Below, one piece after another: positions 19,545 through 62,024 of a stretch of 64,000 bases of DNA; positions within the stretch are counted from its first letter, which is position 1; the number at the start of each line of letters is the position of its first letter. Origin of the DNA: Haliotis rufescens (taxonomy: Eukaryota). The translations under genes were made by a program, and so were the position numbers. The notes under the pieces are model-generated. The model had not been told where the DNA came from, searched no databases, and saw only the letters and a list, made by a program, of their open reading frames with translations. Location of the stretch: contig NW_025964334.1 of the NCBI RefSeq assembly GCF_023055435.1, positions 15,376,001-15,440,000 of the forward strand, written 5' to 3'.

Positions 19545-19629
19545 TGTTGTCAATATCATATAATGAAATATTTCTTTTCTTTCTTCTAGGTAAGTACTGG
19601 TTTCATTTCTCAGAAGATGTCTGGTAAGG
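19545..19629 (+). promoter_or_regulatory. Candidate recursive splice site with 34-nt cryptic RS-exon
   Basis: tttcttttctttcttctAG|GTAAGT (AG 19588-19589), no other AG for 46 nt upstream, and a second donor ctg|gtaagg at 19624. Confidence 0.65.
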
Positions 19630-19655
19630 ATTTTATGTCAAATATCAAAGGTCAT

Positions 19656-19873
19656 GTGATGGGTTTAATGCCACTCCTAATAATAGTTCAGTTATTTCAT
19701 GGCATCGCAGCGTACGTTAGGAGAAAGCTCAAAGTGGCACAGGCTCTAGACATTTGCCATTTTTGTTTAAATCAATGTCACAGGAATGGATTTGAACCCA
19801 TGGCCAGAGGATCCTGTCACAATTAAGGGGCATAACTCTGCACAGTGAATTGCTGTGTCTCAGAGCAGTTGGC
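19656..19873 (-). mobile_element. Highly diverged family E SINE
   Basis: Colinear with 13560-13818: gggtttaatgcca, cagttat, ggatttgaaccca, aaggggcataactc. Confidence 0.65.
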
Positions 19874-20024
19874 TTGTATGCATTGCATTTCAAAGACATA
19901 ACTTACATATAAACATATATGTACTGAGATATCTTTCAATAAAATGTTCAATACCTGTTTCAGGCAATACATACAGGCAATTCATAGACAAAGTGCATGC
20001 CAGTAGTTCATAGTATTTAGTCTC

Positions 20025-23000
20025 CTGTAGGGATTCCAAGATAGATTGGTCCCCAGCCACTTGTGGGGATCCAAGATAGAATAGGTCCCCAGCAACCTGT
20101 GGGAATCAAAGATAGAATAGGTCCCCCGCAACCTGTGGGAATCCAAGATAGAATAGGTCCCCAGCAACCTATGGGAATCCAAGATAGAATAGGTCCCCAG
20201 CAACCTGTGGGAATCCAAGATAGAATAGGTCCCCAGCAACCTGTGCTGGTCATGCTGTGGGAATCCAAGATAGAATAGATCCCCAGCAACCTGTGGGAAT
20301 CCAAGATAGAATAGGTCCCCAGCAACCTGTGCTGGTCATGCTGTGGGAATCCAAGATAGAATAGATCCCCAGCAACCTGTGGGAATCCAAATTAGAATAG
20401 GTCCCCTGCAACCTGTGGGAATCCAAGATAGAATAGGTCCCCAGCAACCTGTGGGAATCCAAGATAGAATAGGTCCCCAGCAACCTGTGCTGGTCATGCT
20501 GTGGGAATCCAAGATAGAATAGATCCCCAGCAACCTATGCTGGTCGTGCCATGTGGACCCAAGATAGAATAGGTCCCCAGCAACCTATGCTGGTCGTGCC
20601 ATGTGGACCCAAGATAGAATAGGTCCCCAGCAACCTATGCTGGTCGTGCCATGTGGACCCAAGATAGAATAGGTCCCCAGCAACCTATGCTGGTCGTGCC
20701 ATGTGGACCCAAGATAGAATAGGTCCCCAGCAACCTGTGGGAATCCAAGATAGAATAGGTCCCCAGCAACCTATGCTGGTCGTGCCATGTGGACCCAAGA
20801 TAGAATAGGTCCCCAGCAACCTGTGGGAATCCAAGATAGAATAGGTCCCCAGCAACCTATGCTGGTCGTGCCATGTGGACCCAAGATAGAATAGGTCCCC
20901 AGCAACCTGTGGGAATCCAAGATAGAATAGGTCCCCAGCAACCTATGCTGGTCGTGCCATGTGGACCCAAGATAGAATAGGTCCCCAGCAACCTGTGGGA
21001 ATCCAAGATAGAATAGGTCCCCAGCAACCTATGCTGGTCGTGCCATGTGGACCCAAGATAGAATAGGTCCCCAGCAACCTGTGGGAATCCAAGATAGGAT
21101 AGGTCCCCAGCAACCTATGCTGGTCGTGCCATGTGGACCCAAGATAGAATAGGTCCCCAGCAACCTGTGGGAATCCAAGATAGAATAGGTCCCCAGCAAC
21201 CTATGCTGGTCGTGCCATGTGGACCCAAGATAGAATAGGTCCCCAGCAACCTGTGGGAATCCAAGATAGAATAGGTCCCCAGCGACCTATGCTGGTCGTG
21301 CCATGTGGACCCAAGATAGAATAGGTCCCCAGCAACCTGTGGGAATCCAAGATAGAATAGGTCCCCAGCAACCTATGCTGGTCGTGCCATGTGGACCCAA
21401 GATAGAATAGGTCCCCAGCAACCTGTGGGAATCCAAGATAGAATAGGTCCCCAGCAACCTATGCTGGTCGTGCCATGTGGACCCAAGATAGAATAGGTCC
21501 CCAGCAACCTGTGGGAATCCAAGATAGAATAGGTCCCCAGCAACCTATGCTGGTCGTGCCATGTGGACCCAAGATAGAATAGGTCCCCAGCAACCTATGC
21601 TGGTCGTGCCATGTGGACCCAAGATAGAATAGGTCCCCAGCAACCTATGCTGGTCGTGCCATGTGGACCCAAGATAGAATAGGTCCCCAGCAACCTATGC
21701 TGGTCGTGCTGTGTGGACCCAAGATAGAATAGGTCCCCAGCAACCTATGCTGGTCATGCCATGTGGACCCAAGATAGAATAGGTCCCCAGCAACCTATGC
21801 TGGTCGTGCCATGTGGACCCAAGATAGAATAGGTCCCCAGCAACCTATGCTGGTCGTGCCATGTGGACCCAAGATAGAATAGGTCCCCAGCAACCTATGC
21901 TGGTCGTGCCATGTGGACCCAAGATAGAATAGGTCCCCAGCAACCTATGCTGGTCGTGCCATGTGGACCCAAGATAGAATAGGTCCCCAGCAACCTATGC
22001 TGGTCGTGCCATGTGGACCCAAGATAGAATAGGTCCCCAGCAACCTATGCTGGTCATGCCATGTGGACCCAAGATAGAATAGGTCCCCAGCAACCTATGC
22101 TGGTCATGCCATGTGGACCCAAGATAGAATAGGTCCCCAGCAACCTATGCTGGTCGTGCCATGTGGACCCAAGATAGAATAGGTCCCCAGCAACCTATGC
22201 TGGTCGTGCCATGTGGACCCAAGATAGAATAGGTCCCCAGCAACCTATGCTGGTCGTGCTGTGGGAATCCAAGATAGAATAGGTCCCCAGCAACCTATGC
22301 TGGTCATGCCATGTGGACCCAAGATAGAATAGGTCCCCAGCAAGCTATGCTGGTCGTGCCATGTGGACCCAAGATAGAATAGGTCCCCAGCAACCTATGC
22401 TGGTCGTGCCATGTGGACCCAAGATAGAATAGGTCCCCAGCAACCTATGCTGGTCGTGCCATGTGGACCCAAGATAGAATAGGTCCCCAGCAACCTATGC
22501 TGGTCGTGCCATGTGGACCCAAGATAGAATAGGTCCCCAGCAACCTATGCTGGTCATGCCATGTGGACCCAAGATAGAATAGGTCCCCAGCAACCTATGC
22601 TGGTCATGCCATGTGGACCCAAGATAGAATAGGTCCCCAGCAACCTATGCTGGTCATGCCATGTGGACCCAAGATAGAATAGGTCCCGAGCAACCTATGC
22701 TGGTCATGCCATGTGGACCCAAGATAGAATAGGTCCCCAGCAACCTATGCTGGTCATGCCATGTGGACCCAAGATAGAATAGGTCCCCAGCAACCTATGC
22801 TGGTCGTGCCATGTGGACCCAAGATAGAATAGGTCCCCAGCAACCTATGCTGGTCGTGCCATGTGGACCCAAGATAGAATAGGTCCCCAGCAAGCTGTGC
22901 TGGTCATGCCATGTGGACCCAAGATAGCATAGGTCCCCACAACCTATGCTGGTCGTGCCATGTGGACCCAAGATAGAATAGGTCCCCCGCAACCTATGCT

Positions 23001-23445
23001 GGTCGTGCCATGTGGACCCAAGATAGAATAGGTCCCCAGCAACCTATGCTGGTCGTGCCATGTGGACCCAAGATAGAATAGGTCCCCAGCAAGCTGTGCT
23101 GGTCATGCCATGTGGACCCAAGATAGAATAGATCCCCAGCAACCTATGCTGGTCGTGCCATGTGGACCCAAGATAGAATAGGTCCCCAGCAAGCTGTGCT
23201 GGTCATGCCATGTGGACCCAAGATAGAATAGGTCCCCAGCAACCTGTGCTGGTCATGCCATGTGGACCCAAGATAGAATAGATCCCCAGCAACCTATGCT
23301 GGTCGTGCCATGTGGACCCAAGATAGAATAGGTCCCCAGCAAGCTGTGCTGGTCATGCCATGTGGACCCAAGATAGAATAGGTCCCCAGCAACCTATGCT
23401 GGTCGTGCTGTGGGGATTCTGGGGTATACTTGGTTCCCAGAAACC
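20025..23445 (+). repeat. 3.4-kb tandem array of 36-bp and 50-bp units derived from the 5' domain of a family B-related element
   Basis: Core tagaataggtccccagcaacctatgctggtcgt aligns with family B tagaataggtcttcagcaacccatgcttgtcgt. Confidence 0.95.
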
Positions 23446-23625
23446 TTTGCTGGTCACAAATAAGTCCGGTCATCCGGCTCTGTGTCATGGTTGGTAGCGT
23501 GGAAAGTCGTGCACAATATCAATCACTGGATTGTCTGGCCCTGACTTGATAATTTACAGACTGCTGTCATATAGCTGGAATATTGCTGTGTCCCTCCCTC
23601 CTTAAACAACAAACACACAAACAAA
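23408..23625 (+). mobile_element. Body and tail of the family B-related element hosting the array
   Basis: tcaatcactggattgtctggcc...tttacagactgctgtcatatagctggaatattgctg...ttaaacaacaaac is the family B 3' half. Confidence 0.85.
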
Positions 23626-23657
23626 ACACTTATGGTGCCTGTCTTTCCACATCACCA

Positions 23658-23823
23658 GGGGTGGTCGGGTAGCCTAGTGGTTAAAGCGTTCGCTCGTCAC
23701 GCCGAAGACCCGTGTTCGAGTCCCGACATGGGTACAATGTGTGAAGCCCATTTCTGGTGTCCCCCGCCGTGATATTGCTTGAATATTGCTAAAAGCGGCG
23801 TAAAACCATACTCACTCACTCAC
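23658..23823 (+). mobile_element. Family A tRNA-SINE (~170 bp), full length
   Basis: A box gtagcctagtggttaaagc, B box gttcgagtccc, (actc)n tail, perfect TSD tccacatcacca (23646-23657, 23824-23835). Confidence 0.95.
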
Positions 23824-24108
23824 TCCACATCACCAATCCTATGTATATTATACAGGAATACAATCAGCCCATCAAACACTGGCCATTGTCTTCATCATGG
23901 ACAGAGCTATTACGTCATCACTGCATTGTGTCATATGATACTGATCACAATAATGATGAAGCTGGATACAATACTTCTGTTCAACAAGTGTTTCATGTGT
24001 TGTATTTCATGGCCTTCAATAAACAATAATGTCATCCAGATTTACTAAACTTCTTTATGCCAAATAAATGTGCTTTATCAGGCAATATAACTGAGACGCT
24101 ATATGGCT

Positions 24109-24344
24109 AACCCATGAAGAACATGTCTACAGCAGCCCATGCTTGTCGTAAGGATGACTAATGTGATCGGATGATCGACCTCACGGAATAGGTTGATGCA
24201 TATCATCATATCCCAATTGCGTAGGTTGATGCTCATGATGTCAATCACTGGATTGTCTTGTCCAGACTCAATTATTTACAGACTGTCGTCATATAGCTGG
24301 AATATTGCTGGTTGTTGCATTAAACAACAAACAAACATACAAAC
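24109..24344 (+). mobile_element. Family B element
   Basis: TSD agacgctata(t/g)ggct (24094-24108, 24345-24359). Starts aacccatgaag and has only one gtcgtaag..gac module. Confidence 0.9.
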
Positions 24345-26127
24345 AGACGCTATAGGGCTGAAATAATGCTGATGCAACATTAAATTTTAACTCACTTATA
24401 AAATTAAAAATTCAGAAAAGAATAAAGAATAATGATCATCATTCCTTCCAAATTTACCTGATTTTACAATGACACGGTATGTGTATTTGTTTTATTGCTT
24501 TTTACAACAAGACTGAAATGAACGTGATATTGACATGCGTACATTTCACCTCTCCAGATGACAGCCTGTGTCTTGTGTATCTATAACGCCTCCAACAGTG
24601 ACATTCCAAGTCTCTCATCTGATAATAATTCCCTACTTTCTCCATGGAATTATTTGCACAAATTGTGTCCTTTTTATAGAGGGGTTAATACCGTCATACG
24701 TCTTCAAACCCCCAAACCCTAGCTCTCCCCTAATACATTCTGTGAAGAATGATTTATGTGCTTGAGCGACATATTACAGTTAATAGCGTGGAAAATTGAA
24801 TCTAGTTTGGAGACTGTATGTTGGAGGTATCTGTTATGAACCAGAACCTTTAATATGCTTATAAATCCCCATTGTTTTAGCACATGATATAGTAATAGGA
24901 TTATCCTACACTAAGCCCTTGCCTCTGAGCGTGGCTTGTCATTTCCACTCTCGTGTCTTCATGCTCGAAATTCCCGAGAGGTCAATGTTTCAGGAGTGAA
25001 AGAGTTAGCTCCCTTTGATCAGAAATGCTACTTGTGGAATTCTTTTTGTTCAGTTAATCGCATTGAAAGGTTAATTTTTATTGAATTTAGGTCTTGTTAC
25101 AAATTGAATTGTTGTAACAAAAAATCTTACTGATTTTATTTCTGTTGAGTCTTCGAACTGTTTTGCTTAGGTTGAAGAACAATATGGGATATTTTATGAA
25201 TGCTTCAATGGGTGTTTTGCCATAATGGTCTGAATGAGTCGTTTTATAAATGTTCTGTTTTCCACTCATTAATGAGCCTTAATGGCTAATGTTTCAAAGC
25301 AGGAAGGAATGAAAAATGGTCAAGTGCGTCTCTTGTAATGCTGAAAAAAATAGAAATTTCTTCTCTTAATCTAGTCGATATTCTGCAATGCGCAAATGAT
25401 ATACAGAACAGAGTGTGATGGGCTATTATTTCTCAATGTGTTTTCTCGCACAAAAATTTGCACATTTTTTAGTGATCAATTCAGATTTTTTAGTCTATGC
25501 TTGTCTAGCACTTGTCAGATACTTCAGCTCGAATAAATGGTGAAAAAGTTATCAATTGCAAACAGAGGTTGATATCAAGCATTTGCAGAAGGGATTTAAG
25601 CGTCTTTACGTCCATTTGGCTGTGTCAGACGGTGTGAACATTTTGTTGTCAATTGCACAATCATTACACTGTAAACAAACTGTCTGTCACTGGAGTGTTT
25701 GCGTAATCTGGCGGGAATGAGCGTCCATTTCGGTGGTTCATTTCGAGTGGAATGTTGAAATGAAAATAATGTAGTCTAGAGGTCAAAAATGGAATTTAAA
25801 ATATTTTAAAATATTTTGCAAACACACTTGGGAGCATGAATGATGGCTGACAGGACATGTATGTTACCTTAGTGCAATGTATCATGACAGACAAGTAGGA
25901 CGAGGGTGAAATTGATGACTTTGAGTGCTGGTTCATTTCATTGTACAAAATGCCCTTACACTGAGTCAAGTGAATTCTACTTCACAAGTCAGTCATTTTT
26001 TCACACAGAAGTCATGTGATCAGATAATGAACTTTAACTGTTGAAAGAATTACTTTGAATGCAAAAAAATTCTCTAATCGTGCCATGAACATTCACATAG
26101 TTAATGGAATTTGGCACATTGTAAATT

Positions 26128-26139
26128 TTATTATTATTA

Positions 26140-26186
<47 letters not shown>
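26128..26186. repeat. (att)n microsatellite
   Basis: Direct reading. Confidence 0.97.
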
Positions 26187-29164
26187 ATAATTGTCAGGAT
26201 TAAAAAGATTCTGTGTTAATAAGTAGTTCTGTCATAATATCATTTGTAGATATGGAGAAATTCTTGACAGTAGTTGTCAGGAAAACAGAATCTCAAGAAT
26301 ACTTGGGTCTTCCTTAAATGGAAATCTGACAGTAAATACTTTGTTATCCAAATTAATTCTGTAATATTCCACACCAAGAATAAAGTTCATGTACATTACC
26401 TCAAAAGGATGAATTATAATACAACCTTCGAAAATGAGTTCATCTAGCATAATTGAAATTAGCAATTTACATTTAATTTATAATAAGCTAAATTTATGAT
26501 AAGTAATCAAAAAACTTATACAACTATCAAGACAAGACAAAAAATATAAGCCCAATTTGTTACCTCCCCTCTACCTTGCAATAGAACACATATCTGGAAT
26601 TCTTTGCAGGTTGATTTAAAAAAAACAAGACTTGGAACAGTGATTTGTGTATCAGAGCCGAGTAGAACAACGTCCTGCAGACCACCAGATTAGCCGGGCC
26701 AGCAAATTCCCCAATTCATCGCTAATAGGACAACTAATTACATAAAAGGTCACTTAAACGTATCGCCAGGATCCCATCCATCCTTAATCTGCTGCTAGAT
26801 GGGAGACATAGGAAATATATGTCCTTCTTTACTGGGTCATCTGCAATGTACGTAGAACCACCCTCCTGCCCTAGGCTTCAATCAATATTCTTTTAAGCAA
26901 TTGAGTATGGCTTAACGAACATGTAATAGTCACTAAACACTTGCCAATGTGTAGGTTTAGTTAACGTCGTTATACTGGCGTTACCAAGGGCTGCCTTGCA
27001 GACAGGGTTACTTGGTAATGAATTAAGATGATTTATTTAAATTGATTTCTTTTGCGTTTTGTAAATTTTTAAAACAATCAGTTTTCTTAAATGTAAAGTC
27101 TTTTTTCAGTTTTTGCTTCAAAAACTCTTTAAAGCTGCAGACCGGTAATCAGACATCACATTTTTTAATTTTTTACTTTATTTTATTCAAGTTATATTTG
27201 TTATAGAACATCTGTTGTCTTGACCTTGTTGGAGGGAGTGAGTGCGAAAGTAGAATTCACATTTGCTGAAGTGGTTTTTTGCTTAAAAGAGATTTTACTA
27301 AAAAGTTCTAAGAAGCTGACATCATGCATACAAGACTAGAAAGTTGAAAGGGGATTTTTAGGAATTAATGCAAATGAGTTCTTGTACCTTTAATAAAATG
27401 AGAAAGGTTTTGAACAATTTATCAATGATTTTTTCGTTTAGTTTTGTAAATTATTACAACCAAAATGTGTTTTTTAAAAATATGTTTTATTCAGTTATTG
27501 TTAAAAGGATTTATTGTCCTGTGATCATAAGTTTTGATGCATTTCTTCCTTTTTTAATCCTTTTTCAAAATGGATATCTACAAATGTACCAAACTGACCC
27601 CACGATATGGGAATGTAGGAGTCTGGAGATTGATGAAATATGCAGAAATTGACACATTCACAGACACCCCATCTTCCATCAAAGGAACATAATATTGGCT
27701 TTATATTACCGTTGTCAGTTTCATTCAATATGAAATAGAGGTATGTACTAGTTCACCCATGGTGGAGGTTTTTCACCTAAATAGATTGCAAACATGGAAA
27801 AATTTGGATTCATGTTTTTTTTTCAGATCCTGATTTCAATACAAATATGTATTTTTGTTTTTTGGTTATTTTTCTGATGTTATACAGTGATTTATAAAAT
27901 GCGAATTATTGAAACTGACAAGTTGAGTTATATTTGATATTTACAATTTACAATACAGAAATTGGCATCTGGTATTGAGTACATTTCGCCCTTGAAGCGC
28001 AGGAGTGTAGTCAAAGGGAGATAACTGAGTATTTGATCAATGAAAGCAGAAACAGCAAAGCACTGATGGATGACAACGTTCACGAGTACATTTCAGACTA
28101 TGTGGGAAGTGGATGAAATCTCTAGTGGTTTGATGACATTGTGTACCTAACTGACCAACAAAATAACAAATTGGCCTGTCTTTTTTCTGATTGTTTTATT
28201 GAAGTAATGCAGGATTGTCATGCTTTATGTTTGAGAGGAATGGTAATAATTTCAATATCTTTGGTTAAAAATAGTTTCATTTTGAATGGTGTCAATTCCA
28301 CATCTTTTTACATGGAATGTTTATGTAACTGTGTAAGCAGATATTTAACATTTTTTTCGTCAGTCTAATTTGTCTTTTGAAACTTTGGGAAAGCTTGACA
28401 TAAAATCATATTTCCAAGTTTATTTAGTTTTATGATAGGCAACATAGTAAACCCTGTTTTCTTTAAGTGGTGCATCGCAGACTTGGTGATTGCTGCAGCA
28501 TTAATAATATAAATTCTAGGAATGTTTTTGGTAGTAATTGTCGGAGTGATAAGTTTTATAGTTTGGAGGATAGTTTCTCTATATTTTAAAATCACATTAA
28601 CATTTACAAGAGTGTTTGTAAGAGCTTGAGATGAACGCTGCCATAAGTGTCAGTAGTCATCATGTACAAACGATCAGGGAAACATGATATGGATGGCATT
28701 TCAAGGGCAGCGTTACACGAGGAGCAGCAGCCTTTAATTCATCACTTTTTTTGTGTCAAAAAGGATTTCATACAGATTTAAATCCCATTAAAGCAAGAAG
28801 GCTTAGTACACCTTATCTAAATGTATTTACGACAAGTTTATGGAGATTGTGCGCGAAATCTAGATAAAGGGGACATATGTCATCTTGGATAACATGCTTG
28901 CCACGTTCACTCAGAAAATAATCAATAGTTGTTTTTTTTATCAGCTTGAGAGAGCTGATTTAGTTTTTATTAAATTTTGTCAAGTAAAATCAACTTACGT
29001 TATTGTTATTTAAGCATGAATGATGCAGAGTGTATCATAAATAATGTGTTTTTAGTGGTTTATATATTGGTTTGAGAGAAACTGTCTAATAATCCAGGAT
29101 GCAGATAAATTCAATATGTGCATGTATGTTGATGTTAAAACAATGTGGTGTTTAGTGTAAGACT

Positions 29165-29681
29165 CAATCTCATTTAAATCAGATCTTAGTTGTCGCTACC
29201 ACTAAACAAAGATCTGAAGACATCCCATTACATGATTACGGGTCACGTCAGACCGACCTTGCGCAAACTTTGACCGACCAATGGAATGACTGACAAGAAG
29301 TCAACATTAGCCAATCACAAGGCAGCTTTCTCATGCTTTACGGCACTAATTTCAAATTGGCTACTACACCTCGAAACATATTTTGACAAATTCCCGATTA
29401 AAAATTTGAAACCCGAACAAAAGAACATTCTCGAATGCCTCATATATGGTCTAGATTGTTTCGATTCAGTCGTTAAGCCCGTAACTATCGTTCGGAATAC
29501 CAGTTTTGAAGTTTTTGAGGCTGTATGATGAGAAATCACATTCCGACTGTCCCTTTCATGATCTGGTAAGCGACGCTCTGATTGGTCGGATGAAAGGTCG
29601 CTCTGACGTGACCCCTAATGGGATGTCCTCAGATCTTTGTTTTGTGGTAGCGAGAACTAAGATCTGATTTTAATCAGATTG
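29165..29681 (+). mobile_element. Non-autonomous DNA transposon with ~100-bp TIRs and a 10-bp TSD; AcademH-like
   Basis: TIR caatctcatttaaatcagatcttagtt... pairs with ...aactaagatctgattttaatcagattg. TSD gtgtaagact (29155-29164, 29682-29691). Internal helicase-like peptide. Confidence 0.85.
29391..29462 (+). pseudogene. Remnant of a RecQ-type SF2 helicase N-terminal motif 0/Q-motif region
   Basis: FPIKNLKPEQKNILECLIYGLDCF resembles the RecQ pattern F..xxLKPEQxxxLxxLxxGxDxF. The sequence breaks off before the expected Walker A (PTGxGKS). Confidence 0.6.
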
Positions 29682-29882
29682 GTGTAAGACTAAAAGAAAT
29701 AGCCTGTGTTGTTTCATTGGATGTATTTATTAAAGGAGAGTTGGGCTTGGTGAACTACCATGGGTAGATAGGGTAGCCCTGCGGTCCCGGTGTTCACTTG
29801 AGTTTGAATCTGGTCTTAGGTACACGCTCCCCTGTGTGGGATCAGACCAGGAAAGTTTCTCAGTGCCATCTTCTTGTTCCAA

Positions 29883-30122: not shown

Positions 30123-30159
30123 GCAGATGGGACAGTCAACAGTCAATTATGATGGCATC

Positions 30160-30162
<3 letters not shown>

Positions 30163-30217
<55 letters not shown>
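30163..30217. repeat. (ct)n microsatellite
   Basis: Direct reading. Confidence 0.97.
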
Positions 30218-30227
<10 letters not shown>

Positions 30228-50363: not shown

Positions 50364-50364
<1 letters not shown>

Positions 50365-50369
50365 GTTAG

Positions 50370-51607: not shown

Positions 51608-51786
51608 CAGGGTGGTCGGGTAGCCTAGTGGTTAAAGCGTTGGCTCGTCACGCCGAAGACCCGGGTTCGATTCCCAACATGGGTACAATATGTGAAGCCC
51701 ATTTCTGGTGTCCCCCGCCGTGATATTGCTGGAATATTGCTAAAAGCGGCATAAAACCTCACTCACTCACTCACTCACTCACTCAC
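51608..51786 (+). mobile_element. Family A tRNA-SINE, young copy
   Basis: CpGs retained; TSD tctaaaagcagt (51596-51607, 51787-51798). Confidence 0.96.
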
Positions 51787-52409
51787 TCTAAAAGCAGTTA
51801 TCCCTTGTAGCATAACGGGAAAGCCAGTCATACAGATGACCCAGTTGAGCTATTGCCCACTTTGGTATATTTTCCGAAGGCCAGTTTAGTATCACCTGCC
51901 ACGCTATTGCAAGACTGGTAGGTTTGGCAGACCCATTCTTGTGTTGTCACTTGACATGATTTAGCTGGCATGTCTAATTGGGTTGTGGTCTTTTTAATGT
52001 TGATTGTGTTAGCCTTACCCATTCCTTTCCTGTTACTCAGGGACCCCCTACAAGCTTGCCACAGTGCTGTGTTTTTATTATCATCTTCCATAAGCATCAA
52101 ACATAATGTCAACTTCGTTCCCAGCGTATCATGCATTTTATGAAAATTTCGTGATAAAAACACCCTGTTCTCCCCATCTCAGACCCAAGTCAGTTCCTGA
52201 ATCACTCCCCTTGGGACTCCATCCCCCGATCCCCCTAATCCCCTACCCGCCCCCAATCCCCTACCCCCCATGCTGTAAAAGCAACTCAACCTCCCCATCT
52301 CATATTGCTTCCCTCACACACACAAATTTCTGATTCTGTCCCTACCATATCTCACACTAGCCTACACCCCCACTCCCATCCCATCCCAAGTGTAAGAGGC
52401 TCCCATCCC

Positions 52410-52785
52410 CACCACCCCCACCCCCCACCCCCCACCCCCGATGTGTATGACACTCCCCCCACCCCCTACCTCTGTATGTTTGACACAAGACGTAGTCTAT
52501 TTCACACCCACCGCCACATCCCCACCCTTATGTGTATGACACTCCCACCCCACCCCCCACCTCTGTATGTTTGACACAAGTAGATTTCACACCCACCGCC
52601 ACACCCACACCCAAGTGTATGACACTCCCACCCACCCCCATGTGTATGACACTCCCACCCACCCCCATGTGTACGACACTCCCACCCCCATGTGTACGAC
52701 ACTCCCACCGCCACCCCCACCCCCATGTGTACGACATTCCAACATCCACCCCCACCCCCATGTTTATGACACTTACCCACTCCCA
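52410..52785. repeat. C-rich minisatellite, ~23-35 bp unit (cccccatgtgtatgacactcccaccca)
   Basis: Recurrent tgtgta(t/c)gacactccca within a wider C-rich zone, about 52190-52985. Confidence 0.85.
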
Positions 52786-53840
52786 CTACAGCTTTATCGA
52801 CAGCAAACCAATTTCAAAAACAACCCATCACCTCCCACCCCTATCTCTGACTCCTGCCATCTCACCCCAAACCCCCCATCCCAAAACAGCCAATTACATC
52901 CCACCCCATACATCCTCCACCCCCACACACACCCTCAGCCCCCACCTACTCCCAACCCCCTAACCCCAACACTCTCCAAACCAGCATTTCATCTACAACA
53001 ATTTCAACTCTACTCAGCAAATGAGGGTTTGTCATTTTCTCGCTTATCACGGCCAAAAAACCGATTCGATCAATCATCCCGATCCTCCATGTTCTAGAAG
53101 ACACGGAGTCTATGTGAAGAACACATCCCCAGCTTCAGTGGCAGCAAAAAACATCTTCGATCTGCCCGTGAAGATTCCCTGTTGCACATCCCAGAAGGAT
53201 CACCACTCAAGTCGTCAATTTTGATCCTTAAGAGAAGAGATATGTACATATTTGTTCTCTGCTCCTCCATTTGTAAATTACCCCAAAAGGCACACTTTCC
53301 ACTAGCTCTCCGTCCCCTATTTAAACCCTAAATGGATCCCCCTTGCTCTCTGAGAGATTGATGATCTCCTGATGCTGTAATTAAAAACTAGCTAACGTAC
53401 TGGCGCCATCAAGAAGAGCTTACATTTGTCCAGTGTTCAAGTCCCTACAGCATCACTGTCAGACAGAAGCCAGGAAAGATTCATTATGTTTTTGACGAGA
53501 AATTCACGTGCATTCACGTATGTTGCATATCGGATGCAGCCATTGCTGTTCCACCCGTACCCTAGCGAAGTAAGCTGAATCTCATTCCATTAACATCTTA
53601 TCACAGAACACCTGTCTGTGAGAAATAGATTAAAGATCCTATTCCATATCTCATTAATTTTCAATTTTTGAAACCCAAATTAAAAGACTTTGTCATTTAA
53701 CCCTAAGTGTGGGGATTCATATGAAAGGAAATTCAATGATTAAGTGAAATATCTGGTAAAATTTACATTTTGTGATATGTTGTTAAAATTTGTAAATAAG
53801 TTTTGAGTTCTTGTATTGTGTTATATTTGTGTTCGGTAAT

Positions 53841-53943
53841 AGTGAGTGAGTGAGTGGGTGAGTGAGTATGGTTTTACGCCACTTTTAGCAATATTCCAGC
53901 AATATCACGGTGGGGGACACCAGAAATGGGCTTCACACATTTG
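53841..53943 (-). mobile_element. 5'-truncated family A SINE
   Basis: (gagt)n tail plus 3' body; flanked by gttc(g/t)gtaata. Confidence 0.9.
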
Positions 53944-55225
53944 TTCTGTAATACGATAGGTGGAACACAATTAGACTCCAACTCTTGCCAGTATTTATCA
54001 CTCATTCCTAGCTGCCAATCCTGCTGTGAATGTGTTTATCAAACTGCATCAAACATTAACTAATGTAGAGCTAGACTCTGAAAAGCTTTTCGTTGTCTAT
54101 CAGGCAGCATGTTAATCACTTTCAGACAACGTCATGTTGTGTCATTATCTTCCATATCTGCTAAGCGTCATATTTCATATTTCGATGCCTTCAAGAGGTG
54201 TAGCTACTGGCTGTGACCTCTCATTATTTTCATCATTGAAACCAGTATGCTGTCAAATCTATATCAGCATCTTAGGTCACAAAGTTTGTTTTAAAGTTTA
54301 TGTTCAAAAACTTAACTACAGTTCCTTCGAGTTCACGTCTTTTCACAGATAAAATGATAAAAACAGGTTTTTTCACTCATATCATTTGAAATTAAGAATT
54401 TTAAATTCAAAAAATCTTTGATGGAACCAACTCTTATCATTGTGGTGAGTTATTTATGGGATCCAAAATTTTATTTTGGAAAAATAATTTTCCATGTGTA
54501 ATGATTCTGATGAGAAGTCGTTGACGTCACACTTTTTGCGTCGAAGAGATCATTGGATGTGGATTTTTGATGAGGTGCGAGCAACATTAAATATTGAATC
54601 AGCAGTAATGAAAGTAACAATATCATCATGACCGAGGCGACGTGAGATTATAAATAAGTCATAACCAAGAGGAATCAAGGACGAAATCATCGTGTTAGTT
54701 TGCCGATTCCGATGAACACAAGCAAGATGTGTTAATGTACACTTGCTCATTTCAAGGAGTGTAAAAGGGGTGTGAAGATTTGTTGTCTCAAAATGTTTTC
54801 ACACATTATGAGGCTAATCCCAGACACGGCTCCACTAGCTGTTGCCATATTTGCCCAGAGTATCTTACAATAATGAAATTTGGATAAATCAATGTTTTTC
54901 ATCATGTTTCCTCGAAATATGAGCTGAAATTTGCATTTTGAAAATGCAGATTCTCACAAAAGTCCATGTTTGTGCTACTGAGTGTGTTTGACTTGATAAA
55001 AACCAAGAGAACGAAAATTCTTGGAATATGTCATGGCGGACAAAACAGGAAACAAATGGTAATTTCATATTTTTCTGTGGTCATCATAGTCATGGTCTAT
55101 TAATATGATTTTAAATTTTGTTCCGAAGAGGATTGAAAAACCATGACGGTGTATGCTGAAGATGAAGAAGAATTAGAGGAAGAAGAATTGTAATGTACGA
55201 AACACCCTGTTGGGACAAGACAGAG

Positions 55226-55433
55226 TTTTGTTTGTTTGTTTGTTGTTTAACCCTGCACTCTGCAATATTCCAGCTATATGATGGTGGTCTGTAAATAATC
55301 GAGTCTGGACCAGACAATCCAGTGATTAACATCATGAGCATCGATCCACGCAATTGGGATACGATGACATGCATCAACCAAGTCAGCAAGCCTGACCACC
55401 CGATCCCATTAGTTGCCTCTTACGACAAGCATA
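55226..55433 (-). mobile_element. 5'-truncated family B element
   Basis: Reverse complement of B from tgcttgtcgtaagaggcaactaa to the (aaac)n tail. Confidence 0.92.
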
Positions 55434-55605
55434 TTTGCCTGCAAATAGAGTACATTTATATGGCACAGAGACAAGAACATGGCCAACAGTTATACAGTAC
55501 CTAAATGCATGAAAACATGATGAGAATGAAAATAACAGGGACAAAACTCTTTCAATACATAAAATTACACAGATTCTAACATTATTTGCAATGTTCTCTG
55601 GCAAG

Positions 55606-55981
55606 GACAGGTCCAAACGTACTACCCAGGTACCCGACCCCCTATTATCCAACCCTACCTGGGTACCCGCTGTTGGTCTCAAGAGATAGGTACAAAATAT
55701 CCTATTGGGAATTGCCATGGCAAAAGGTTATAAGATGTACATATGAAATGATCTGGTCATGCATACACTGAAGTTGACAGAAGATTTGTCTTTATTCAAT
55801 CATATAAAAGTCAGAAGGACAGTGTGGATATTCAGCAGAAATGCGAACATTAGTGACATAGTGTCATTGTCATTAAACAATATACCGCGTGACTAAAAGG
55901 GTTGTCCTGTGGGTACCCGGGTCCTACTCTGTACCCACCCGACCCGAGTACCCGAGTACCCGAGTTACCCATCCCACCTCT
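55606..55981. mobile_element. Possible hAT-like DNA transposon remnant (clusters of acccg/gggtacc sub-terminal words)
   Basis: acccgagt x3 plus acccatcccacctct at 55942-55981, and gggtaccc clusters at 55620-55670. No TSD or matching second TIR found. Confidence 0.4.
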
Positions 55982-57133
55982 TCAGTGTACATCAGCATAC
56001 AAGATGAGGGTCTATGACTATAATTAATACACAGATGTAAATGAGATGTGTTTATAATCATGTGTGTGTTCATTCGTGACCAAATCGTGTTATTCCGGGA
56101 CAAGCCGAATAGCGACTCGTGCCCCTCTCATGGCCATTTTTGCGACCGGGTTCCGTCTTAGCGCAAACGGGCATACCTAAAACAGTTGTCAACTTGTTGC
56201 GTAATGGTTCACATATATTTCCCCATATATTATATATATTTTAGATGCAATTTAAAGCACATCAGGACATGCGGAATTATACAGTATGATTGAACACATT
56301 TAACTGTGTCTTGGGTATATTTTCGATGCAAGACATATGTAAAATCAAAAAATATTTCTGAGGGATTCTTTGACAAAGAACTTGAAATCATAGCGCATTC
56401 TGTTTGGTTTGTCGTATTTTCGCACATAACATTCATTGATAGGGGGACAAGTCTTCTTGCAGGTTACGAAAAGGGGCGAGTGGTGACGAATGGTGTGTGT
56501 TCCTTGCCAGCGGGTCCCTTTAAAACAACCTCAGAGAAAACAAGTAAAACTTTTGAAATGAACCAGAGCCGGTTTCAATGACTCTGAAATACACATGAAA
56601 TGCCTATGAGAAACATACGGGATACACACACCAACTTCATCAAAGAAAATGTTTAAATTAAATAAACAGATTGAAATCAGCCACGGTCATTCATCACAGT
56701 TGGGGATCTGTTCAATTTAGGCTGGTACAGCTTTTGACCTGACCCATGAGGGCAGCGTAGCTGGACTGACCAGTTCTGACCCCACCCCCAACGGAGCATC
56801 ATTTCCCCCTTGTGATGGGCGGATTCCATTTGTGTAATTACTATAATACCTGAATTATTAATGGCTGACTGGTAGTTACTGCATGAGTCAAGCACACATA
56901 ACAAGGATACGCTCTTGATTGACAGGCCGTTGTCTATGGCATCAGTAGCAGACACTCCAACCACCTTGCTAAACGTGTGTCACTTTGAAATGAGCTTCAT
57001 TGTAAATGCACTTAGGGCCAGTGCAATAATACATTGATATGGGATTGTCCCACTCAGGGTGAAATGTACATGATATTGACGACCTCAAATGTAGAACTGA
57101 CATGTTTAAACAAACGGGCTTCTGATGAAAGTC

Positions 57134-57580
57134 GACTGTCTCCATGGTCTAGTGGTTAGAGCGTCTGCCTGGAGAGTGGAGGGTCTGTGGTTTGATCCTG
57201 TCTGCCTCATACCAAAAGACATTAAAAGATGGAACTTGTTGTTTCCCTGCCTGCCACTCGGTATAAGAGGCTAAAACAAGGACTGGTTCGCTCAGAGTCA
57301 GCATACTGGGTTTGGGTGGGGTATTTATATTTAACTGCAGCATGGTATCTCAATGGGCTGGCACTATAAAACAGGCAAACAGGCATTGNNNNNNNNNNNN
57401 NNNNNNNNNNNNNNNNNNNNNNNNNNNNNNNNNNNNNNNNNNNNNNNNNNNNNNNNNNNNNNNNNNNNNNNNNNNNNNNNNNNNNNNNNNNNNNNNNNNN
57501 NNNNNNNNNNNNNNNNNNNNNNNNNNNNNNNNNNNNNNTTGAACATGACATTTAACTTTTTTTGCACCTCACCTCATCTC
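57134..57580 (+). mobile_element. Family C (Meta/MESC-like) SINE spanning the assembly gap
   Basis: tggtctagtggttagagc head, cataccaaaagacattaaaagatgg domain; the tail ttgaacatga...cacctcacctc follows the Ns. Confidence 0.85.
57389..57538. other. Assembly gap (150 N)
   Basis: Run of n. Confidence 1.
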
Positions 57581-58162
57581 TGATCAAAGTAAAGTTTCAT
57601 GAACTTAATTTAACCATTTCAAAATTAACAAAGTACAACCCAAATTGATTACAGCTGGAATAAATCAGAACTCGAGCGACAGTTCTCAACATTACCTTAT
57701 CAATAGATAATCATTGTGGTATATATTTCTTGAGAATTCTTCAAAAGTAACAAAAAGATACTTATTTATTCACAAACCACCATATATCTAGGCCACCAAT
57801 TGTCTATGTGGAGTTTCTCAAGGACATCTTTGAATGCGATATATGGATCTTTGTCAACTGATAATGGATGCTAATTCCAGTAACTAGAGTTCTCTCCAGT
57901 GATACATACTGTGGGTAGCCAAAGGTGAAATTGAGTAGACTTCAATGGCTTCTGATTTGTCTGTGTGAAGATAACCGTAGATCGTAAAGATGATGTGGTA
58001 TGCATGATTACTTTAGAAGGCAGTTATTTCACAAACACTCTGTAGTATTTATATTTCAAGTGACTTGTCATCAATGTTTGATCAGAACCAGCCTCTGAGA
58101 AAGTATGTTAAAATATCAATACAATTTAACAATACCTTTTATCATCTACAATCATTTTGAAT

Positions 58163-58181
58163 ATCATCATCTTCATCATCG

Positions 58182-58212
<31 letters not shown>

Positions 58213-58221
58213 AACCACCAC

Positions 58222-58251
<30 letters not shown>
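58163..58251. repeat. (cat)n microsatellite, with a complementary (gat)n tract at about 58329-58353
   Basis: Direct reading. Confidence 0.95.
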
Positions 58252-58254
<3 letters not shown>

Positions 58255-58952
58255 CCTCCTAACATCTTGACAGTGCCAGGATCACCCAAACCCTCTTTGC
58301 TGCATTTTATTTTTTAAATCAGTTAATAATGATGATGATGATGATGATGATGATAATAATATAAAAAAAATTAAATGATGCAGGTGCTTGTTTCTACGCA
58401 GGTGCTTGTTTCTGTTCAGGTGCTTCTGTCTTGTCTGTCTGGTAATGTTGTGTGACTGTACTTGACTCGTCAGTTTCAAGGTGTCACTTGTCTATTTCAC
58501 TAAGCCTCATAAATTAGCCTCTGGTATAGAATGACGGGGACAGTGTAATACCTTCAATCTGTGTTGTTAATCAGACTTAGGATGAAGCAAGCTCCACCAC
58601 TGAGATGCACCTCTGCTCTTATGTCGCGACATCACTGATGTCAGCTCCTTTTGTACTTGAATGATGATATTAGTCTTATGTTAGGCCATTTTGTCTCAAG
58701 TAGCCTGCTAATGCCTAACTCACATCTTGACCAGAAATTGACGTAGGTCTGTTTCGTCCCTGGTCTTGCTCTGATGATGACATGCCTTGTACGGAGTCTT
58801 GGAAATATGAAATATGCGTCTGTAATATCGAGATAGGATTATGACAAACAAATCCCTGAACTGGTATGATAAAAGGAAAAGGAGTCTGTATGGATCACGA
58901 ACATGACATGAAAGCTATTAGTAATCACAATTTAATTAACGCGCATGATAAT

Positions 58953-59082
58953 ATATATTGAACAAAAAACTTAAGGATCTTGAATATTTTTATGGATGTT
59001 TTTTGTAGTGAAGACTGAACTCACAATTTCATAAAAATACCCCAAAAAATATGAATGATCCCTAACTTTTTGTTTAGTATAT
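58953..59082. mobile_element. ~130-bp palindromic MITE, copy 2
   Basis: atattgaacaaaaaacttaaggatc... pairs with ...gatccctaactttttgtttagtat; homologous to 50370-50502. Confidence 0.75.
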
Positions 59083-59108
59083 TTTAGATAAATGTTCTCG
59101 TTAAACTG

Positions 59109-59277
59109 GACGGTTGGGGAGCCTAGTGGTGAAAGTGTTCACTCGTCACACCGAAGACCCAGGTTTTGATTCCCCACATGGGTACAATATGTGAAGCCCA
59201 TTTCTGGTGTCCCCCGCCACGATATTGCTGGAGTATAGCTATAAGCAGCATAAAACCATACTCACTCACTCACTCAC
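59109..59277 (+). mobile_element. Family A tRNA-SINE
   Basis: Family A consensus with (actc)n tail. Confidence 0.92.
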
Positions 59278-60339
59278 ATCACAGAATTAGTAAAACATGT
59301 AGTTCGGGCCCTGAACTGGCATATTCAAAGTAGACAATGTAGAGAAAGGTCCCTTGCCCAATACAATATGTAAACACAAACACACAATACCATTTATCCC
59401 CACCTGTCTGTGGTGCACTGTCAGATGGGATATTGCTAACTCATTAATATCAGTGCAAAACTCATCAATATCAGTGTATAGCTCGTCAATATCAACGCCA
59501 TGTGCAACCTCTCTCATCACAAAATTGCAAATCAATCGAAAATATTTTGATAAAAAAAGTCAACCAGACAGCTGATTTTACAGATTTTTGACTCATATAT
59601 ACGCCAAAATATTGATATCCTTTCAAATTTTATATTGATGGTTGCATGCAAGACTACAGCATATTGACGACTGATGCAACACAATGCATGTCAGTTGCTG
59701 CCTCTGACAGCTATATACATCACTGACATGCACATCGTCTTGGTCCATGCTCCTATCAGCGGTAGTGATAAGCAACATTAGCGTCATCGATATCACGTGT
59801 CGTCAGATGCAAGGACTTGACGACCCCATGACATGCTAGGCAATCACACAGTATCTACAAATGGCTGACATGAAAAACATGCTGCAAAAAGGTTTACATT
59901 TAACATTTACAACTTGGTGGAATAATGGTTGGAAGCACTAAAAGCCGTCCCTTTAATCTTCATCCTATATGGCCCGGTGATAAAGTATTAAGCGCGTTGC
60001 CATGTATATTGTACAGTCCATGCAATAGTAAATCACCTTGCATCCGTGCACACTATGCAGGCAGTCATCAAGAGCGATGTCTCTATCATGCTAATTCAAT
60101 CAGCCATGGCTATATGCGTTCAGGGATCCCATATACATGTCGTCAATAGCCTCGTCACTTTCATGCAGATTTAATTCACCATGGTCTTATATGGTGTGAA
60201 GTGTACTTGGAGATCGTCATTAGTGAGGTCGATGACAATCAGCCTCATCTTGTGGTCCAGCCATGAAAGTAGAGAATATTTCTGTGTCTATTTGTCAGCA
60301 TGATTGGTCCATGAGTGTTCTCCCTCATGCTCTGACTCA

Positions 60340-60852
60340 GGACCCAAAGTACCCCTATGTATCAGTGTGTAATTTCCATGACCTGACCCAAAATACCTGA
60401 TCAGTGTATAGCTCTCTCTCCTTCCGAGCTGACCCAAAGTACCCCTATGTATCAATGTGTATCCCCCAGACCTGATCTCTTTGTACCCCTATGTATCAAT
60501 GTGTATCCCCCAGACCTGATCTCTTTGTACCCCTATGTATCAGTGTGTATCCCCCGAGACCTGATCTCTTTGTACCCCTATGTATCAGTGTGTATCCCCC
60601 AGACCTGATCTCTTTGTACCCTATGTATCAGTGTGTATCCCCCAGACCTGATCTCTTTGTACCCCTATGTATCAGTGTGTATCCCCAGACCTGATCTCTT
60701 TGTACCCTATGTATCAGTGTGTATCCCCAGACCTGATCACTTTGTACTCCTATGTATCAGCGTTTGTCCCCTGAGACCTGATCCTTTTGTACCCCTATGT
60801 ATCAATGTGTATCCCCCGAGACCTGATCTCTTTGTACCCCTATGTATCAATA
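60340..60852. repeat. Minisatellite, ~42-45 bp unit (acccctatgtatcagtgtgtatcccccagacctgatctctttgt)
   Basis: About 9 good copies from 60440, with diverged copies upstream. Confidence 0.93.
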
Positions 60853-61936
60853 TATCTCCCCCTCCCCACCTCACGCCCCTGAGTATCCTTATGTGTAGGA
60901 GTGTGCCCCTAGGTGCCTGGGCTGCCCTTCATATCAGCTGATTGACAGGTACTTGATGGCTATGTGCATGACAGGTCATTGACAGGTCTGGCCACTCAAA
61001 CCTCATCAATGGCTGATTTGTTTTCTTATCACCCCCCAACACTGGGAGTTTGTGTATTCATGCACCGTGTTTACATACACACAGCCAGATCCTCTCCCCT
61101 CATGCAGATTAATTCATATTGATCAGTAATCAATTTCAGGTTAGGCACGTCTTTGCCGCAATGTGCAAGTGTTTTGTTGCTAGTAACAACATGTACATTG
61201 CTGGGATTTACATATCATTGATACATGTCGCAGCGTTCGTTTCAGCCTTTGATGCCTACCATCACGGATGCTAAATATTTTGCGATGCTATTAGCAAATT
61301 ACCAGCGATGTGTCAAATCCACAGTCTGTGTTTGACTGTATCAGGGAATTGATATATACTTCAGAAAATCGATGCCATGCTAAAATATTTGCCTAGTTTC
61401 AAGATGGTCACAATATGGGATATTTACAGAAGGTCTCCTTTTGATGATTAAATGGTGCAGAATAACACAGTGGAAATCGATTTTCAAACTTTTTCCTTTT
61501 GTTTTGTGTTTTTTTTATAACTTCGGGTGATACTGACGAAAAACAGATGAGCTTATGAAATGAGTTGGTTTGTTTTATATAAATGATATATGATCAATGA
61601 ACCATGCAAATAGACAGTACTTGTTTAACTTGTATGTTGTTAAATGTCACAAACAAAATGATTATGAAATGGACAGCGTCTGTCATTATGTCCGTATCAC
61701 AAAGGTTGTCATGGTGTGTTTGTTTGGGAATTTAAAATTCAAACTTTAAATTTATATTCCTTCAAGGTAAAATTTTACATATATTAAAAAGATAGAAACT
61801 CAAATGACATTCCTCTTCTTTTACATCATATTTTAATTTCAAACTACTATTTTTAACTCTCTTTTTTTAACCAGCCTTTCCTGAACCATTCTGCTATTGA
61901 TTTTAACAGTTTTATTATTACAATGATGATACAATT

Positions 61937-62024
61937 TGTTGTCAATTTTATCAATTGCCTTTTTTTGTCTCTTTCAGGTAAGTACCTCTTCATTTATGAA
62001 TGACTGACATCGGAAACGGTAAGG
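61937..62024 (+). promoter_or_regulatory. Candidate recursive splice site with 41-nt cryptic RS-exon
   Basis: ccttttttttgtctctttcAG|GTAAGT-type junction (AG 61976-61977), no other AG for 66 nt upstream, and a second donor acg|gtaagg at 62019. Confidence 0.7.

What the first reader, a model, noticed from the sequence alone, without database searches (positions are those of the whole stretch)
19545..62024. Two matching recursive-splice-site (ratchet point) cassettes suggest a giant, recursively spliced intron in a probable mollusc
Seen: two + strand sites 42 kb apart, in unique sequence, share the same full architecture. Both have the decamer tgttgtcaat about 30 nt upstream (19545-19554, 61937-61946; branch-point distance), an AG-free zone (46 and 66 nt), a long polypyrimidine tract, YAG fused directly to GTAAGTAC (19589/90, 61977/78), ttcattt a few nt later, and a second donor G|GTAAGG defining a 34- or 41-nt non-3n micro-exon. 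I found no coding exon between them. Established: this is the layout of Drosophila ratchet points and vertebrate RS-exons in very long introns. Inference: the window is one intron of a very long + strand gene, removed stepwise; I know of no description of this in molluscs. Caveat: AGGTAAGT alone is expected roughly once per strand in 64 kb, so the signal is the joint architecture.
Basis: partly seen in the sequence, partly recalled or inferred. Interest (0 to 1): 0.85.

Follow-up and report, generated by a model that had tools for sequence, protein, structure and literature searches.

The report
Five recursive-splice sites, giant abalone intron
A mollusc (abalone-like) genome carries five evenly oriented, near-identical "splice acceptor fused to splice donor" signals spread over 182 kb of exon-free DNA, the hallmark of a giant intron cut out piece by piece as in fruit flies, but I could get no RNA data to prove it.

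Summary
Both sites are in the sequence exactly as described, and they belong to a larger series. In the window plus 100 kb on each side, the + strand carries five Y-tract-AG|GTAAGTAC junctions, 32 to 70 kb apart; the - strand carries none. Each has 17-18 pyrimidines in the last 20 nt, an AG-free zone of 46-82 nt, TT at -5/-6, and a second donor 34-45 nt downstream. That is the anatomy of a Drosophila ratchet point with its cryptic RS-exon.

The 14-mer YYYYAGGTAAGTAC occurs about 80 times outside one tandem array in the 1.33-Gb genome. Five hits on one strand within 182 kb is therefore far beyond chance (about 1e-9). The sites lie in unique, mutually unrelated sequence. I found no coding exon in the 264 kb.

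The main gaps are these:
- No annotation was available.
- The host gene was not identified.

Verdict: these are very probably genuine recursive splice sites of a + strand intron of at least 182 kb. This is a new member of a known kind, and I found no report of it in molluscs. Earlier first-reader notes of this scan flag other recursive-splice-like sites on other DNA of this genome; none has been followed up.

The parts
19545..19554 (+). Decamer tgttgtcaat, 35 nt upstream of the AG. It is a possible branch-point region (tcaAt). It is shared with site 4 only.
   Evidence: No canonical yTnAy match at this site.
19560..19589 (+). 3' splice-site half of ratchet point 3. It has a pyrimidine tract (18 of the last 20 nt), a 46-nt AG-free zone, TT at -5/-6, and ends in TAG.
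19590..19623 (+). Cryptic RS-exon of 34 nt that begins with the regenerated donor GTAAGTAC. Its length is not a multiple of 3, and TAA lies in one frame.
19624..19631 (+). RS-exon donor, G|GTAAGGAT. It matches the consensus less well than the ratchet-point donor.
61937..61946 (+). Decamer tgttgtcaat, 31 nt upstream of the AG.
61948..61977 (+). 3' splice-site half of ratchet point 4. It has a pyrimidine tract (18 of 20), a 66-nt AG-free zone, TT at -5/-6, and ends in CAG.
61978..62018 (+). Cryptic RS-exon of 41 nt that begins with GTAAGTAC. Its length is not a multiple of 3, and there are stops in all three frames.
62019..62026 (+). RS-exon donor, G|GTAAGGTG.
57389..57538 (.). Assembly gap (150 N) inside the segment between sites 3 and 4. 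Continuity is unknown and the gap was not filled.
1..64000 (+). The whole window is read as intronic sequence of an unidentified + strand gene. Three more ratchet points lie outside it, with junctions at G000:C556:15326190|91, 15358391|92 and 15507807|08 (window -49810, -17609, 131807).

Best explanation
The two sites are ratchet points 3 and 4 of a series of at least five recursive splice sites. They lie in one very long intron (at least 182 kb, probably over 230 kb) of an unidentified gene transcribed on the + strand of chromosome-scale contig C556.

Inferred mechanism, by analogy with Drosophila:
1. As RNA polymerase passes each site, the strong 3' splice site and the donor 34-45 nt downstream define a short cryptic RS-exon.
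2. The upstream exon is spliced to that exon. This places GTAAGTAC directly after the exon and so regenerates a perfect 5' splice site.
3. That donor out-competes the weaker RS-exon donor (GTAAGG, GTAAGA or GTAGGG). The cryptic exon is removed with the next intron segment.
4. The cycle repeats, and the intron leaves in segments of roughly 32, 37, 42 and 70 kb plus the two end pieces.

Shown here: the sequence architecture, its strand bias, its uniqueness and its statistical excess.
Inferred: transcription, the order of events, and skipping of the RS-exons.
For: 1. Five + strand AG|GTAAGTAC sites and none on the - strand in 264 kb.
2. Among the 29 AG|GT sites with strong 3' splice-site features on either strand, exactly these five have a perfect donor (score 4.7). 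The next best scores 1.4.
3. The 14-mer YYYYAGGTAAGTAC has 113 hits genome-wide. At least 30 of them fall in one tandem array, and the reversed control pattern has 232 hits. That gives about 0.006 expected per strand in 182 kb against 5 observed.
4. All five sites have TT at -5/-6. In the fly preprint 10.1101/006163 this holds for 99.5% of ratchet points against 44% of ordinary introns.
5. Four of the five sites have GGTAAG 34-45 nt downstream, and the fifth has GGTAGG at +40. The probability of at least 4 of 5 by chance is 3.5e-10 at the local GGTAAG rate, and this feature was not used to pick the sites.
6. This is the layout described for fly ratchet points: a cryptic RS-exon of about 50 nt, a weaker downstream donor, and usually out of frame (PMC8605326). 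Here four of the five lengths are not multiples of 3.
7. The sites lie in unique, mutually unrelated sequence.
8. No coding exon turned up by ORF listing, composition scoring or Pfam.
9. CpG observed/expected is 0.46 across 250 kb. It is 0.41 at other RS-like loci and 0.65 at non-RS-like hits. This fits methylated gene-body DNA.
10. Other same-strand pairs with the same anatomy exist on C2, C190 and C334.
Against: There is no RNA evidence of any kind: no junction reads, no saw-tooth coverage, no lariats. There is no gene annotation.

The flanking exons and the host gene were not found. No homeobox, HMG, forkhead, nuclear-receptor, TALE or RRM exon lies on C556 between 13.4 and 19.6 Mb.

Conservation in other abalones could not be tested.

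The CpG-rich island at window 153.6-162 kb could be a promoter. If so, the 3' end of the putative gene is unclear, and in principle the CpG-poor domain could belong to a - strand gene.

Short or non-coding exons between the sites, or inside the N gap, cannot be excluded. The series might therefore span more than one intron.
Confidence: 0.75

Rival explanations
1. The units are ordinary, expressed cassette micro-exons (34-45 nt) of an unannotated coding or non-coding + strand gene. They are included in mature RNA, and their GTAAGTAC start is not used as a donor.
For: Each unit has a strong acceptor and a good donor. Fly Ubx mI and mII show that such exons can be included (PMC8605326).
Against: All five begin with the same perfect 8-nt donor, which coding micro-exons have no reason to do. 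Four of the five lengths are not multiples of 3, and every unit has a stop in at least one frame. The units share no other sequence. They are 32-70 kb apart.
Confidence: 0.1
2. The sites are strong U1/U2AF landing pads kept in a long transcription unit for another reason, without actual re-splicing. One such reason would be U1-dependent suppression of premature cleavage and polyadenylation.
For: A perfect U1 match (GTAAGTA) recurs at intervals on one strand.
Against: This does not explain the obligatory fused 3' splice site with TT at -5/-6. It also does not explain the second donor at +34 to +45 at every site.
Confidence: 0.05
3. The cluster is chance, a compositional effect, or copies of a dispersed repeat or segmental duplication, in intergenic DNA.
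For: AGGTAAGT alone is expected about once per strand per 64 kb. The region is rich in SINE-like pieces and minisatellites.
Against: About 0.006 sites are expected against 5 observed, all on one strand. The 3-kb flanks of the five sites match each other nowhere at the junction. A reversed control 14-mer shows only one mixed-strand triple.
Confidence: 0.02
4. The region belongs to a - strand gene whose promoter is the CpG-rich island at window 153.6-162 kb. On this reading the + strand motifs are irrelevant to it, or at most serve an antisense transcript.
For: The CpG-poor, presumably methylated, domain ends at that island. In invertebrates gene bodies are methylated and promoters are not (PMC11292947, abstract seen).
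Against: No RS-like or otherwise notable splice architecture exists on the - strand. This reading leaves the five-site series unexplained.
Confidence: 0.08

Closest known systems
Drosophila intronic ratchet points with cryptic RS-exons. Examples are luna (five ratchet points in a 108-kb intron), Ubx, kuz, Antp and Bx.
   Same: - The (Y)n-YAG|GTAAGT junction, with TT at -5/-6 and a prominent pyrimidine tract.
- A cryptic exon of a few tens of nt closed by a weaker donor, mostly frame-breaking.
- Several sites per intron on the sense strand, tens of kb apart (10.1101/006163; PMC8605326).
   Different: - The host is a mollusc.
- The segments are 32-70 kb, against a fly mean of 18 kb and maximum of 64 kb.
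- The span of at least 182 kb exceeds the largest fly recursive intron (133 kb).
- All five sites carry C at +8, which is not a general preference in this genome.
- Use in vivo and conservation are not shown.
Vertebrate RS-exons in very long first introns of brain genes (Sibley et al. 2015, as cited in PMC8605326). Examples recalled from memory, not checked here: CADM1, ANK3, PDE4D, HS6ST3.
   Same: The logic is the same. An RS-exon is defined first, the 5' splice site is regenerated at its start, and the two donors compete.
   Different: Vertebrates have few fully suppressed intronic sites: nine were noted definitively (PMC8605326). From memory, not checked here, there is usually one per intron. 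The abalone series of five in a row is of the fly type.
Splice-junction minisatellites of this genome
   Same: They also contain many AG|GTAAGT units and dominate genome-wide pattern counts.
   Different: Those are tandem copies of one exon boundary with periods of 29-56 nt. The five sites here are single, unique and tens of kb apart.

Membership tests
Drosophila-type intronic ratchet point with cryptic RS-exon | 3' splice site fused to a consensus 5' splice site: (Y)n-YAG|GTAAGT | tested here: met
   Five of five sites read YAG|GTAAGTAC.
Drosophila-type intronic ratchet point with cryptic RS-exon | TT at positions -5 and -6, and a pyrimidine tract more prominent than at ordinary acceptors | tested here: met
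   TT at five of five sites. Pyrimidines are 17-18 of 20 and the AG-free zones are 46-82 nt. The fly figure is from 10.1101/006163.
Drosophila-type intronic ratchet point with cryptic RS-exon | Downstream donor that closes a short cryptic exon (about 50 nt) | tested here: met
   Donors at +43, +45, +34 and +41 (G|GTAAGA or G|GTAAGG) and at +40 (G|GTAGGG, weaker). Chance probability is 3.5e-10.
Drosophila-type intronic ratchet point with cryptic RS-exon | The ratchet-point donor is stronger than the RS-exon donor | tested here: met
   By match to consensus only: GTAAGTA against GTAAGG, GTAAGA and GTAGGG. No calibrated splice-site score was available.
Drosophila-type intronic ratchet point with cryptic RS-exon | The cryptic exon is frame-breaking or carries stops | tested here: met
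   Lengths are 43, 45, 34, 41 and 40. Four are not multiples of 3, and TAA lies in one frame of all five.
Drosophila-type intronic ratchet point with cryptic RS-exon | Branch point 21-36 nt upstream of the AG | tested here: inconclusive
   yTnAy matches lie within -19 to -54 at four sites. There is none at site 3, which has only tcaAt within the decamer. No lariat data.
Drosophila-type intronic ratchet point with cryptic RS-exon | Lies on the sense strand inside a long intron of an expressed gene | not testable with these tools
Indirect support: no coding exon in 264 kb and CpG depletion.
Drosophila-type intronic ratchet point with cryptic RS-exon | Junction reads from the upstream exon, saw-tooth coverage and recursive lariats | not testable with these tools
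Drosophila-type intronic ratchet point with cryptic RS-exon | The junction is more conserved than its flanks in related species | not testable with these tools
Dispersed repeat or segmental duplication | Sequence similarity extends beyond the motif between copies | tested here: not met
   Sites 3 and 4 are single-copy. There are no junction-spanning matches among the five 3-kb flanks.

The most novel reading that the evidence does not exclude
Fly-type zero-nucleotide recursive splicing, with several ratchet points per intron and cryptic RS-exons, operates in a lophotrochozoan. It appears there with the same TT(-5/-6)-YAG|GTAAGT signature. The mechanism would then be ancestral to protostomes, or to bilaterians, rather than an insect speciality. 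This abalone intron, with six or more steps over at least 182 kb, would be longer than any recursive intron listed for Drosophila (133 kb).
Probability: 0.6. Interest if true: 0.7.

Novelty: new member of a known kind. Interest (0 to 1): 0.62.

Why it matters
In the papers I could search, recursive splicing is documented by experiment in Drosophila, human and mouse. There is also some evidence in lungfish and a predicted site in locust. A full-text search for recursive splicing together with molluscs gave only two incidental mentions.

A clean series of five sites in a mollusc would show that the fly-type mechanism is not restricted to insects. It would also offer a concrete locus for RT-PCR, lariat mapping and minigene tests.

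Other same-strand pairs and triples in this genome (C2, C190, C334, C57) suggest a genome-wide set. Such a set could be used to ask how long introns are handled in large invertebrate genomes, and to improve mollusc gene annotation.

Tried and rejected
I stopped there and did not use read laying.
- Host gene by Pfam coordinates: homeobox, HMG box, forkhead, zf-C4, TALE homeobox and RRM searches gave no exon on C556 between 13.4 and 19.6 Mb. I abandoned this as inefficient.
- Rfam over all 264 kb: only two tRNA-like SINE heads, and no intronic snoRNA or miRNA that could have given the strand.
- Genome-wide pattern AGGTAAGTA-N(20,45)-GGTAAG: swamped by splice-junction minisatellites and uninformative. 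TTYYAGGTAAGTAD was likewise swamped by amplified gene arrays and did not list C556.
- Sense-strand depletion of strong donors (11 on + against 39 on -): rejected as evidence, because the - strand excess comes from one (GTGAG)n microsatellite at 5352-5950.
- CpG peaks near -51 kb as a promoter: rejected, because they coincide with SINE-like copies.
- Neighbouring windows in the scan's notes: the tool only accepts places inside the window.
- Organism: earlier notes call this genome red abalone. I did not verify this.
Full report
OBSERVATION
Both sites are exactly as described. Site 1 reads tgttgtcaat (19545-19554) ... tttcttttctttcttcTAG|GTAAGTAC at 19589/19590. It has a second donor CTG|GTAAGG after 34 nt. 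Site 2 reads tgttgtcaat (61937-61946) ... ctttttttgtctctttCAG|GTAAGTAC at 61977/61978. It has ACG|GTAAGG after 41 nt.

The AG-free zones are 46 and 66 nt, and 18 of the last 20 nt are pyrimidines at both sites. A pairwise alignment shows similarity only at these motifs. Each 261-nt site region matches the 1.33-Gb genome once.

The window is G000:C556:15376001-15440000 on a 61.5-Mb contig. Earlier notes of this scan call the genome red abalone. I did not test that.

ASSEMBLY GAP
The 150 N at 57389-57538 lie between the two sites, 4.4 kb upstream of site 2. The two flanks share no repeat or overlap, so continuity is simply unknown. No reading frame is at stake. Only the 42.4-kb distance and the claim that no exon lies between the sites depend on the gap. 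I did not fill it.

THE SERIES IS LARGER
I fetched 100 kb on each side of the window. In these 264 kb the + strand holds five AGGTAAGT sites, and every one reads YAG|GTAAGTAC. The A of each AG is at window position -49811, -17610, 19588, 61976 and 131806. The junctions in genome coordinates are C556:15326190|91, 15358391|92, 15395589|90, 15437977|78 and 15507807|08.

The - strand holds a single AGGTAAGT, with a poor pyrimidine tract (10/20) and a 5-nt AG-free zone. The spacing is 32.2, 37.2, 42.4 and 69.8 kb, a span of 181.6 kb.

All five sites share these features:
- 17-18 pyrimidines in the last 20 nt.
- An AG-free zone of 46-82 nt.
- TT at -5/-6.
- A second donor downstream: ATG|GTAAGA at +43, ATG|GTAAGG at +45, CTG|GTAAGG at +34, ACG|GTAAGG at +41, and a weaker CCG|GTAGGG at +40.

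I then listed every AG|GT in the 264 kb with at least 15/20 pyrimidines and an AG-free zone of at least 30 nt. There are 17 on + and 12 on -. Their donor scores fall into two separate groups: the five sites score 4.7 and the next best scores 1.4. The five are therefore a discrete class, not the tail of a distribution.

STATISTICS
Genome-wide, YYYYAGGTAAGTAC has 113 hits (51 forward, 62 reverse). The same pattern read backwards has 232. At least 30 of the 113 fall in one tandem array on C594.

With about 80 remaining hits in 2 x 1.33 Gb, a 182-kb stretch of one strand expects about 0.006 and shows 5. The chance that any hit has four further same-strand hits within 182 kb is about 3e-9 (my calculation).

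The downstream donor was not used to choose the sites, so it is an independent test. GGTAAG occurs at 9.7e-5 per base locally. The probability that at least 4 of 5 sites have one in a 30-nt window is 3.5e-10.

The five 3-kb flanks share only SINE-like pieces away from the junction. This excludes duplication.

The decamer occurs 8 times on + and 4 times on - in 264 kb, against about 1.5 expected per strand. Two of those copies belong to one repeat family. It precedes only sites 3 and 4. The ttcattt motif is also limited to those two sites.

These motifs are real coincidences between two sites. The decamer may contain their branch point. Neither is part of the common architecture.

SURROUNDINGS
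No long ORF outside tandem repeats, no protein-like composition peak and no Pfam hit among the ten best + strand ORFs was found in 264 kb. No ORF over about 200 aa exists outside minisatellites. Rfam found only two tRNA-like SINE heads.

CpG observed/expected is about 0.46 from -100 kb to +152 kb. It then jumps to 0.9-1.6 between 153.6 and 162 kb. That stretch holds a TATA-like box, and a CAG|GTGAGT donor lies at 162884/5 on the + strand.

Low CpG is what germline-methylated gene bodies show in invertebrates (PMC11292947, abstract seen). Eight RS-like loci elsewhere pool at 0.41, against 0.65 for nine non-RS-like hits of the same 14-mer. This fits a transcribed gene body, but it says nothing about strand.

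COMPARISON WITH WHAT IS KNOWN
The fly papers give these features of ratchet points:
- TT at -5/-6 in 99.5% of ratchet points, against 44% of all introns.
- One to six ratchet points per intron.
- Segments of 2.6-63.6 kb and introns of 11-133 kb. The luna gene has five ratchet points in a 108-kb intron (10.1101/006163).

The abalone series meets every one of these sequence criteria. Four of its five cryptic exons are not multiples of 3. It differs in host, in scale (32-70-kb segments, a span of at least 182 kb) and in an invariant C at +8. That C is not a general preference in this genome, where roughly 19% of TTYY-AG|GTAAGTA hits carry it (my estimate). I cannot explain it.

GENOME-WIDE HINT
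Among the non-array hits of the 14-mer, neighbours 10-200 kb apart are on the same strand 11 times and on opposite strands once (my count). About one such pair is expected at random. A control 14-mer gave one same-strand and one opposite-strand pair.

I could read three of those pairs:
- C2:18972754 and 19062574, both +.
- C190:5193752 and 5290499, both -.
- C334:33826315 and 34011340, both +.

Most members show the same long pyrimidine tract, and four of the six also show a donor at +36 to +48. The phenomenon is probably not limited to this locus.

WHAT IS MISSING
- Coordinate-only Pfam searches (homeobox, HMG, forkhead, zf-C4, TALE, RRM) found nothing on C556 between 13.4 and 19.6 Mb.

The host gene, its flanking exons and its transcription therefore remain inferred.

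LITERATURE
In the searchable library, recursive splicing is documented in fly, human and mouse. There is some evidence in lungfish and a predicted site in locust. Combining the term with molluscs gave two incidental mentions only. A broader spiralian query returned nothing relevant.

VERDICT
The most likely explanation is a recursively spliced giant intron of the Drosophila type (confidence 0.75). The remaining doubt is entirely about expression and gene context, not about the non-randomness of the signal. It is a new member of a known kind, of moderate to high interest for splicing evolution and mollusc annotation.

Noticed in passing
G000:C2:18972754 and 19062574 (+); C190:5193752 and 5290499 (-); C334:33826315 and 34011340 (+). 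Loci L023, L024, L033, L034, L036, L037.: Three further same-strand pairs of TTTCAG|GTAAGTAC, 90-185 kb apart. Most members have long pyrimidine tracts, and four of the six have a donor at +36 to +48. They are likely recursive sites in other giant introns. An HMG-box exon lies at C190:4664911-4665033 on the same (-) strand, about 530 kb downstream of the C190 pair.
   Followed up: partly
G000:C57:15837405, 15987040, 16096703 (+); C112:70613975, 70645440, 70676153 (+); C1:71497455 and 71588184 (+); C594:8954827 and 9113640 (+).: More same-strand series of Y-tract-AG|GTAAGTA hits, seen only as coordinates. The C112 triple has a regular spacing of about 31 kb and could be a segmental repeat.
   Followed up: no
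Outside the window, at window coordinates 153600-162900 (G000:C556:15529600-15538900; loci L021, L022).: A CpG-rich island of about 9 kb (observed/expected 0.9-1.6, GC only 0.34-0.46) ends the 250-kb CpG-poor domain. It holds a TATA-like box and a TGACGTC motif about 165 nt upstream of a CAG|GTGAGT donor on the + strand. This may be a promoter with a non-coding first exon. No Pfam-recognisable ORF.
   Followed up: partly
G000:C223:59298596-59565677 (+): About 90 tandem copies, with a period of about 2.74 kb, of an open frame of 121-136 aa that matches the TALE homeobox model (Homeobox_KN, E = 2e-8 each).
   Followed up: no
G000:C1:48668270-48820630 (-): A cluster of about eleven near-identical full-length forkhead-domain ORFs within 150 kb.
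   Followed up: no
G000:C24:837058-1097521 (+) and C79:23344688-23440393 (+): TTCCAG|GTAAGTAA recurs every 4.0 kb (C24) and every 4.46 kb (C79). These are amplified head-to-tail units that each carry the same splice junction.
   Followed up: no
G000:C594:26961984-26979080 (-) and C35:9971034-9974276 (-): Minisatellites whose units (spacings in multiples of 36 nt on C594, a 29-nt unit on C35) each contain CAG|GTAAGTAC or AG|GTAAGTAC. They are splice-junction arrays of the kind earlier notes describe.
   Followed up: no
window:5352-5950: A (CTCAC)n microsatellite with 156-186-nt higher-order units. On the - strand it reads as dozens of GAG|GTGAGG donor look-alikes. Together with other C-rich minisatellites on the + strand (16651-18701, 46731-48040, 52232-52773), it puts the G-rich, donor-like strand antisense to the proposed transcript.
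   Followed up: partly
window:20024-23408: A 3.4-kb array of 36/50/86-nt units (CCAAGATAGAATAGGTCCCCAGCAACC...) begins 430 nt downstream of ratchet point 3.
   Followed up: no
All five ratchet points (window 19597 and 61985; C556:15326198, 15358399, 15507815).: Position +8 of the regenerated donor is C at all five sites. The chance of this is about 3e-4 at 20% C. C at +8 is not enriched among similar 13-mers genome-wide. From memory, the canonical U1 5' end would not explain it.
   Followed up: partly
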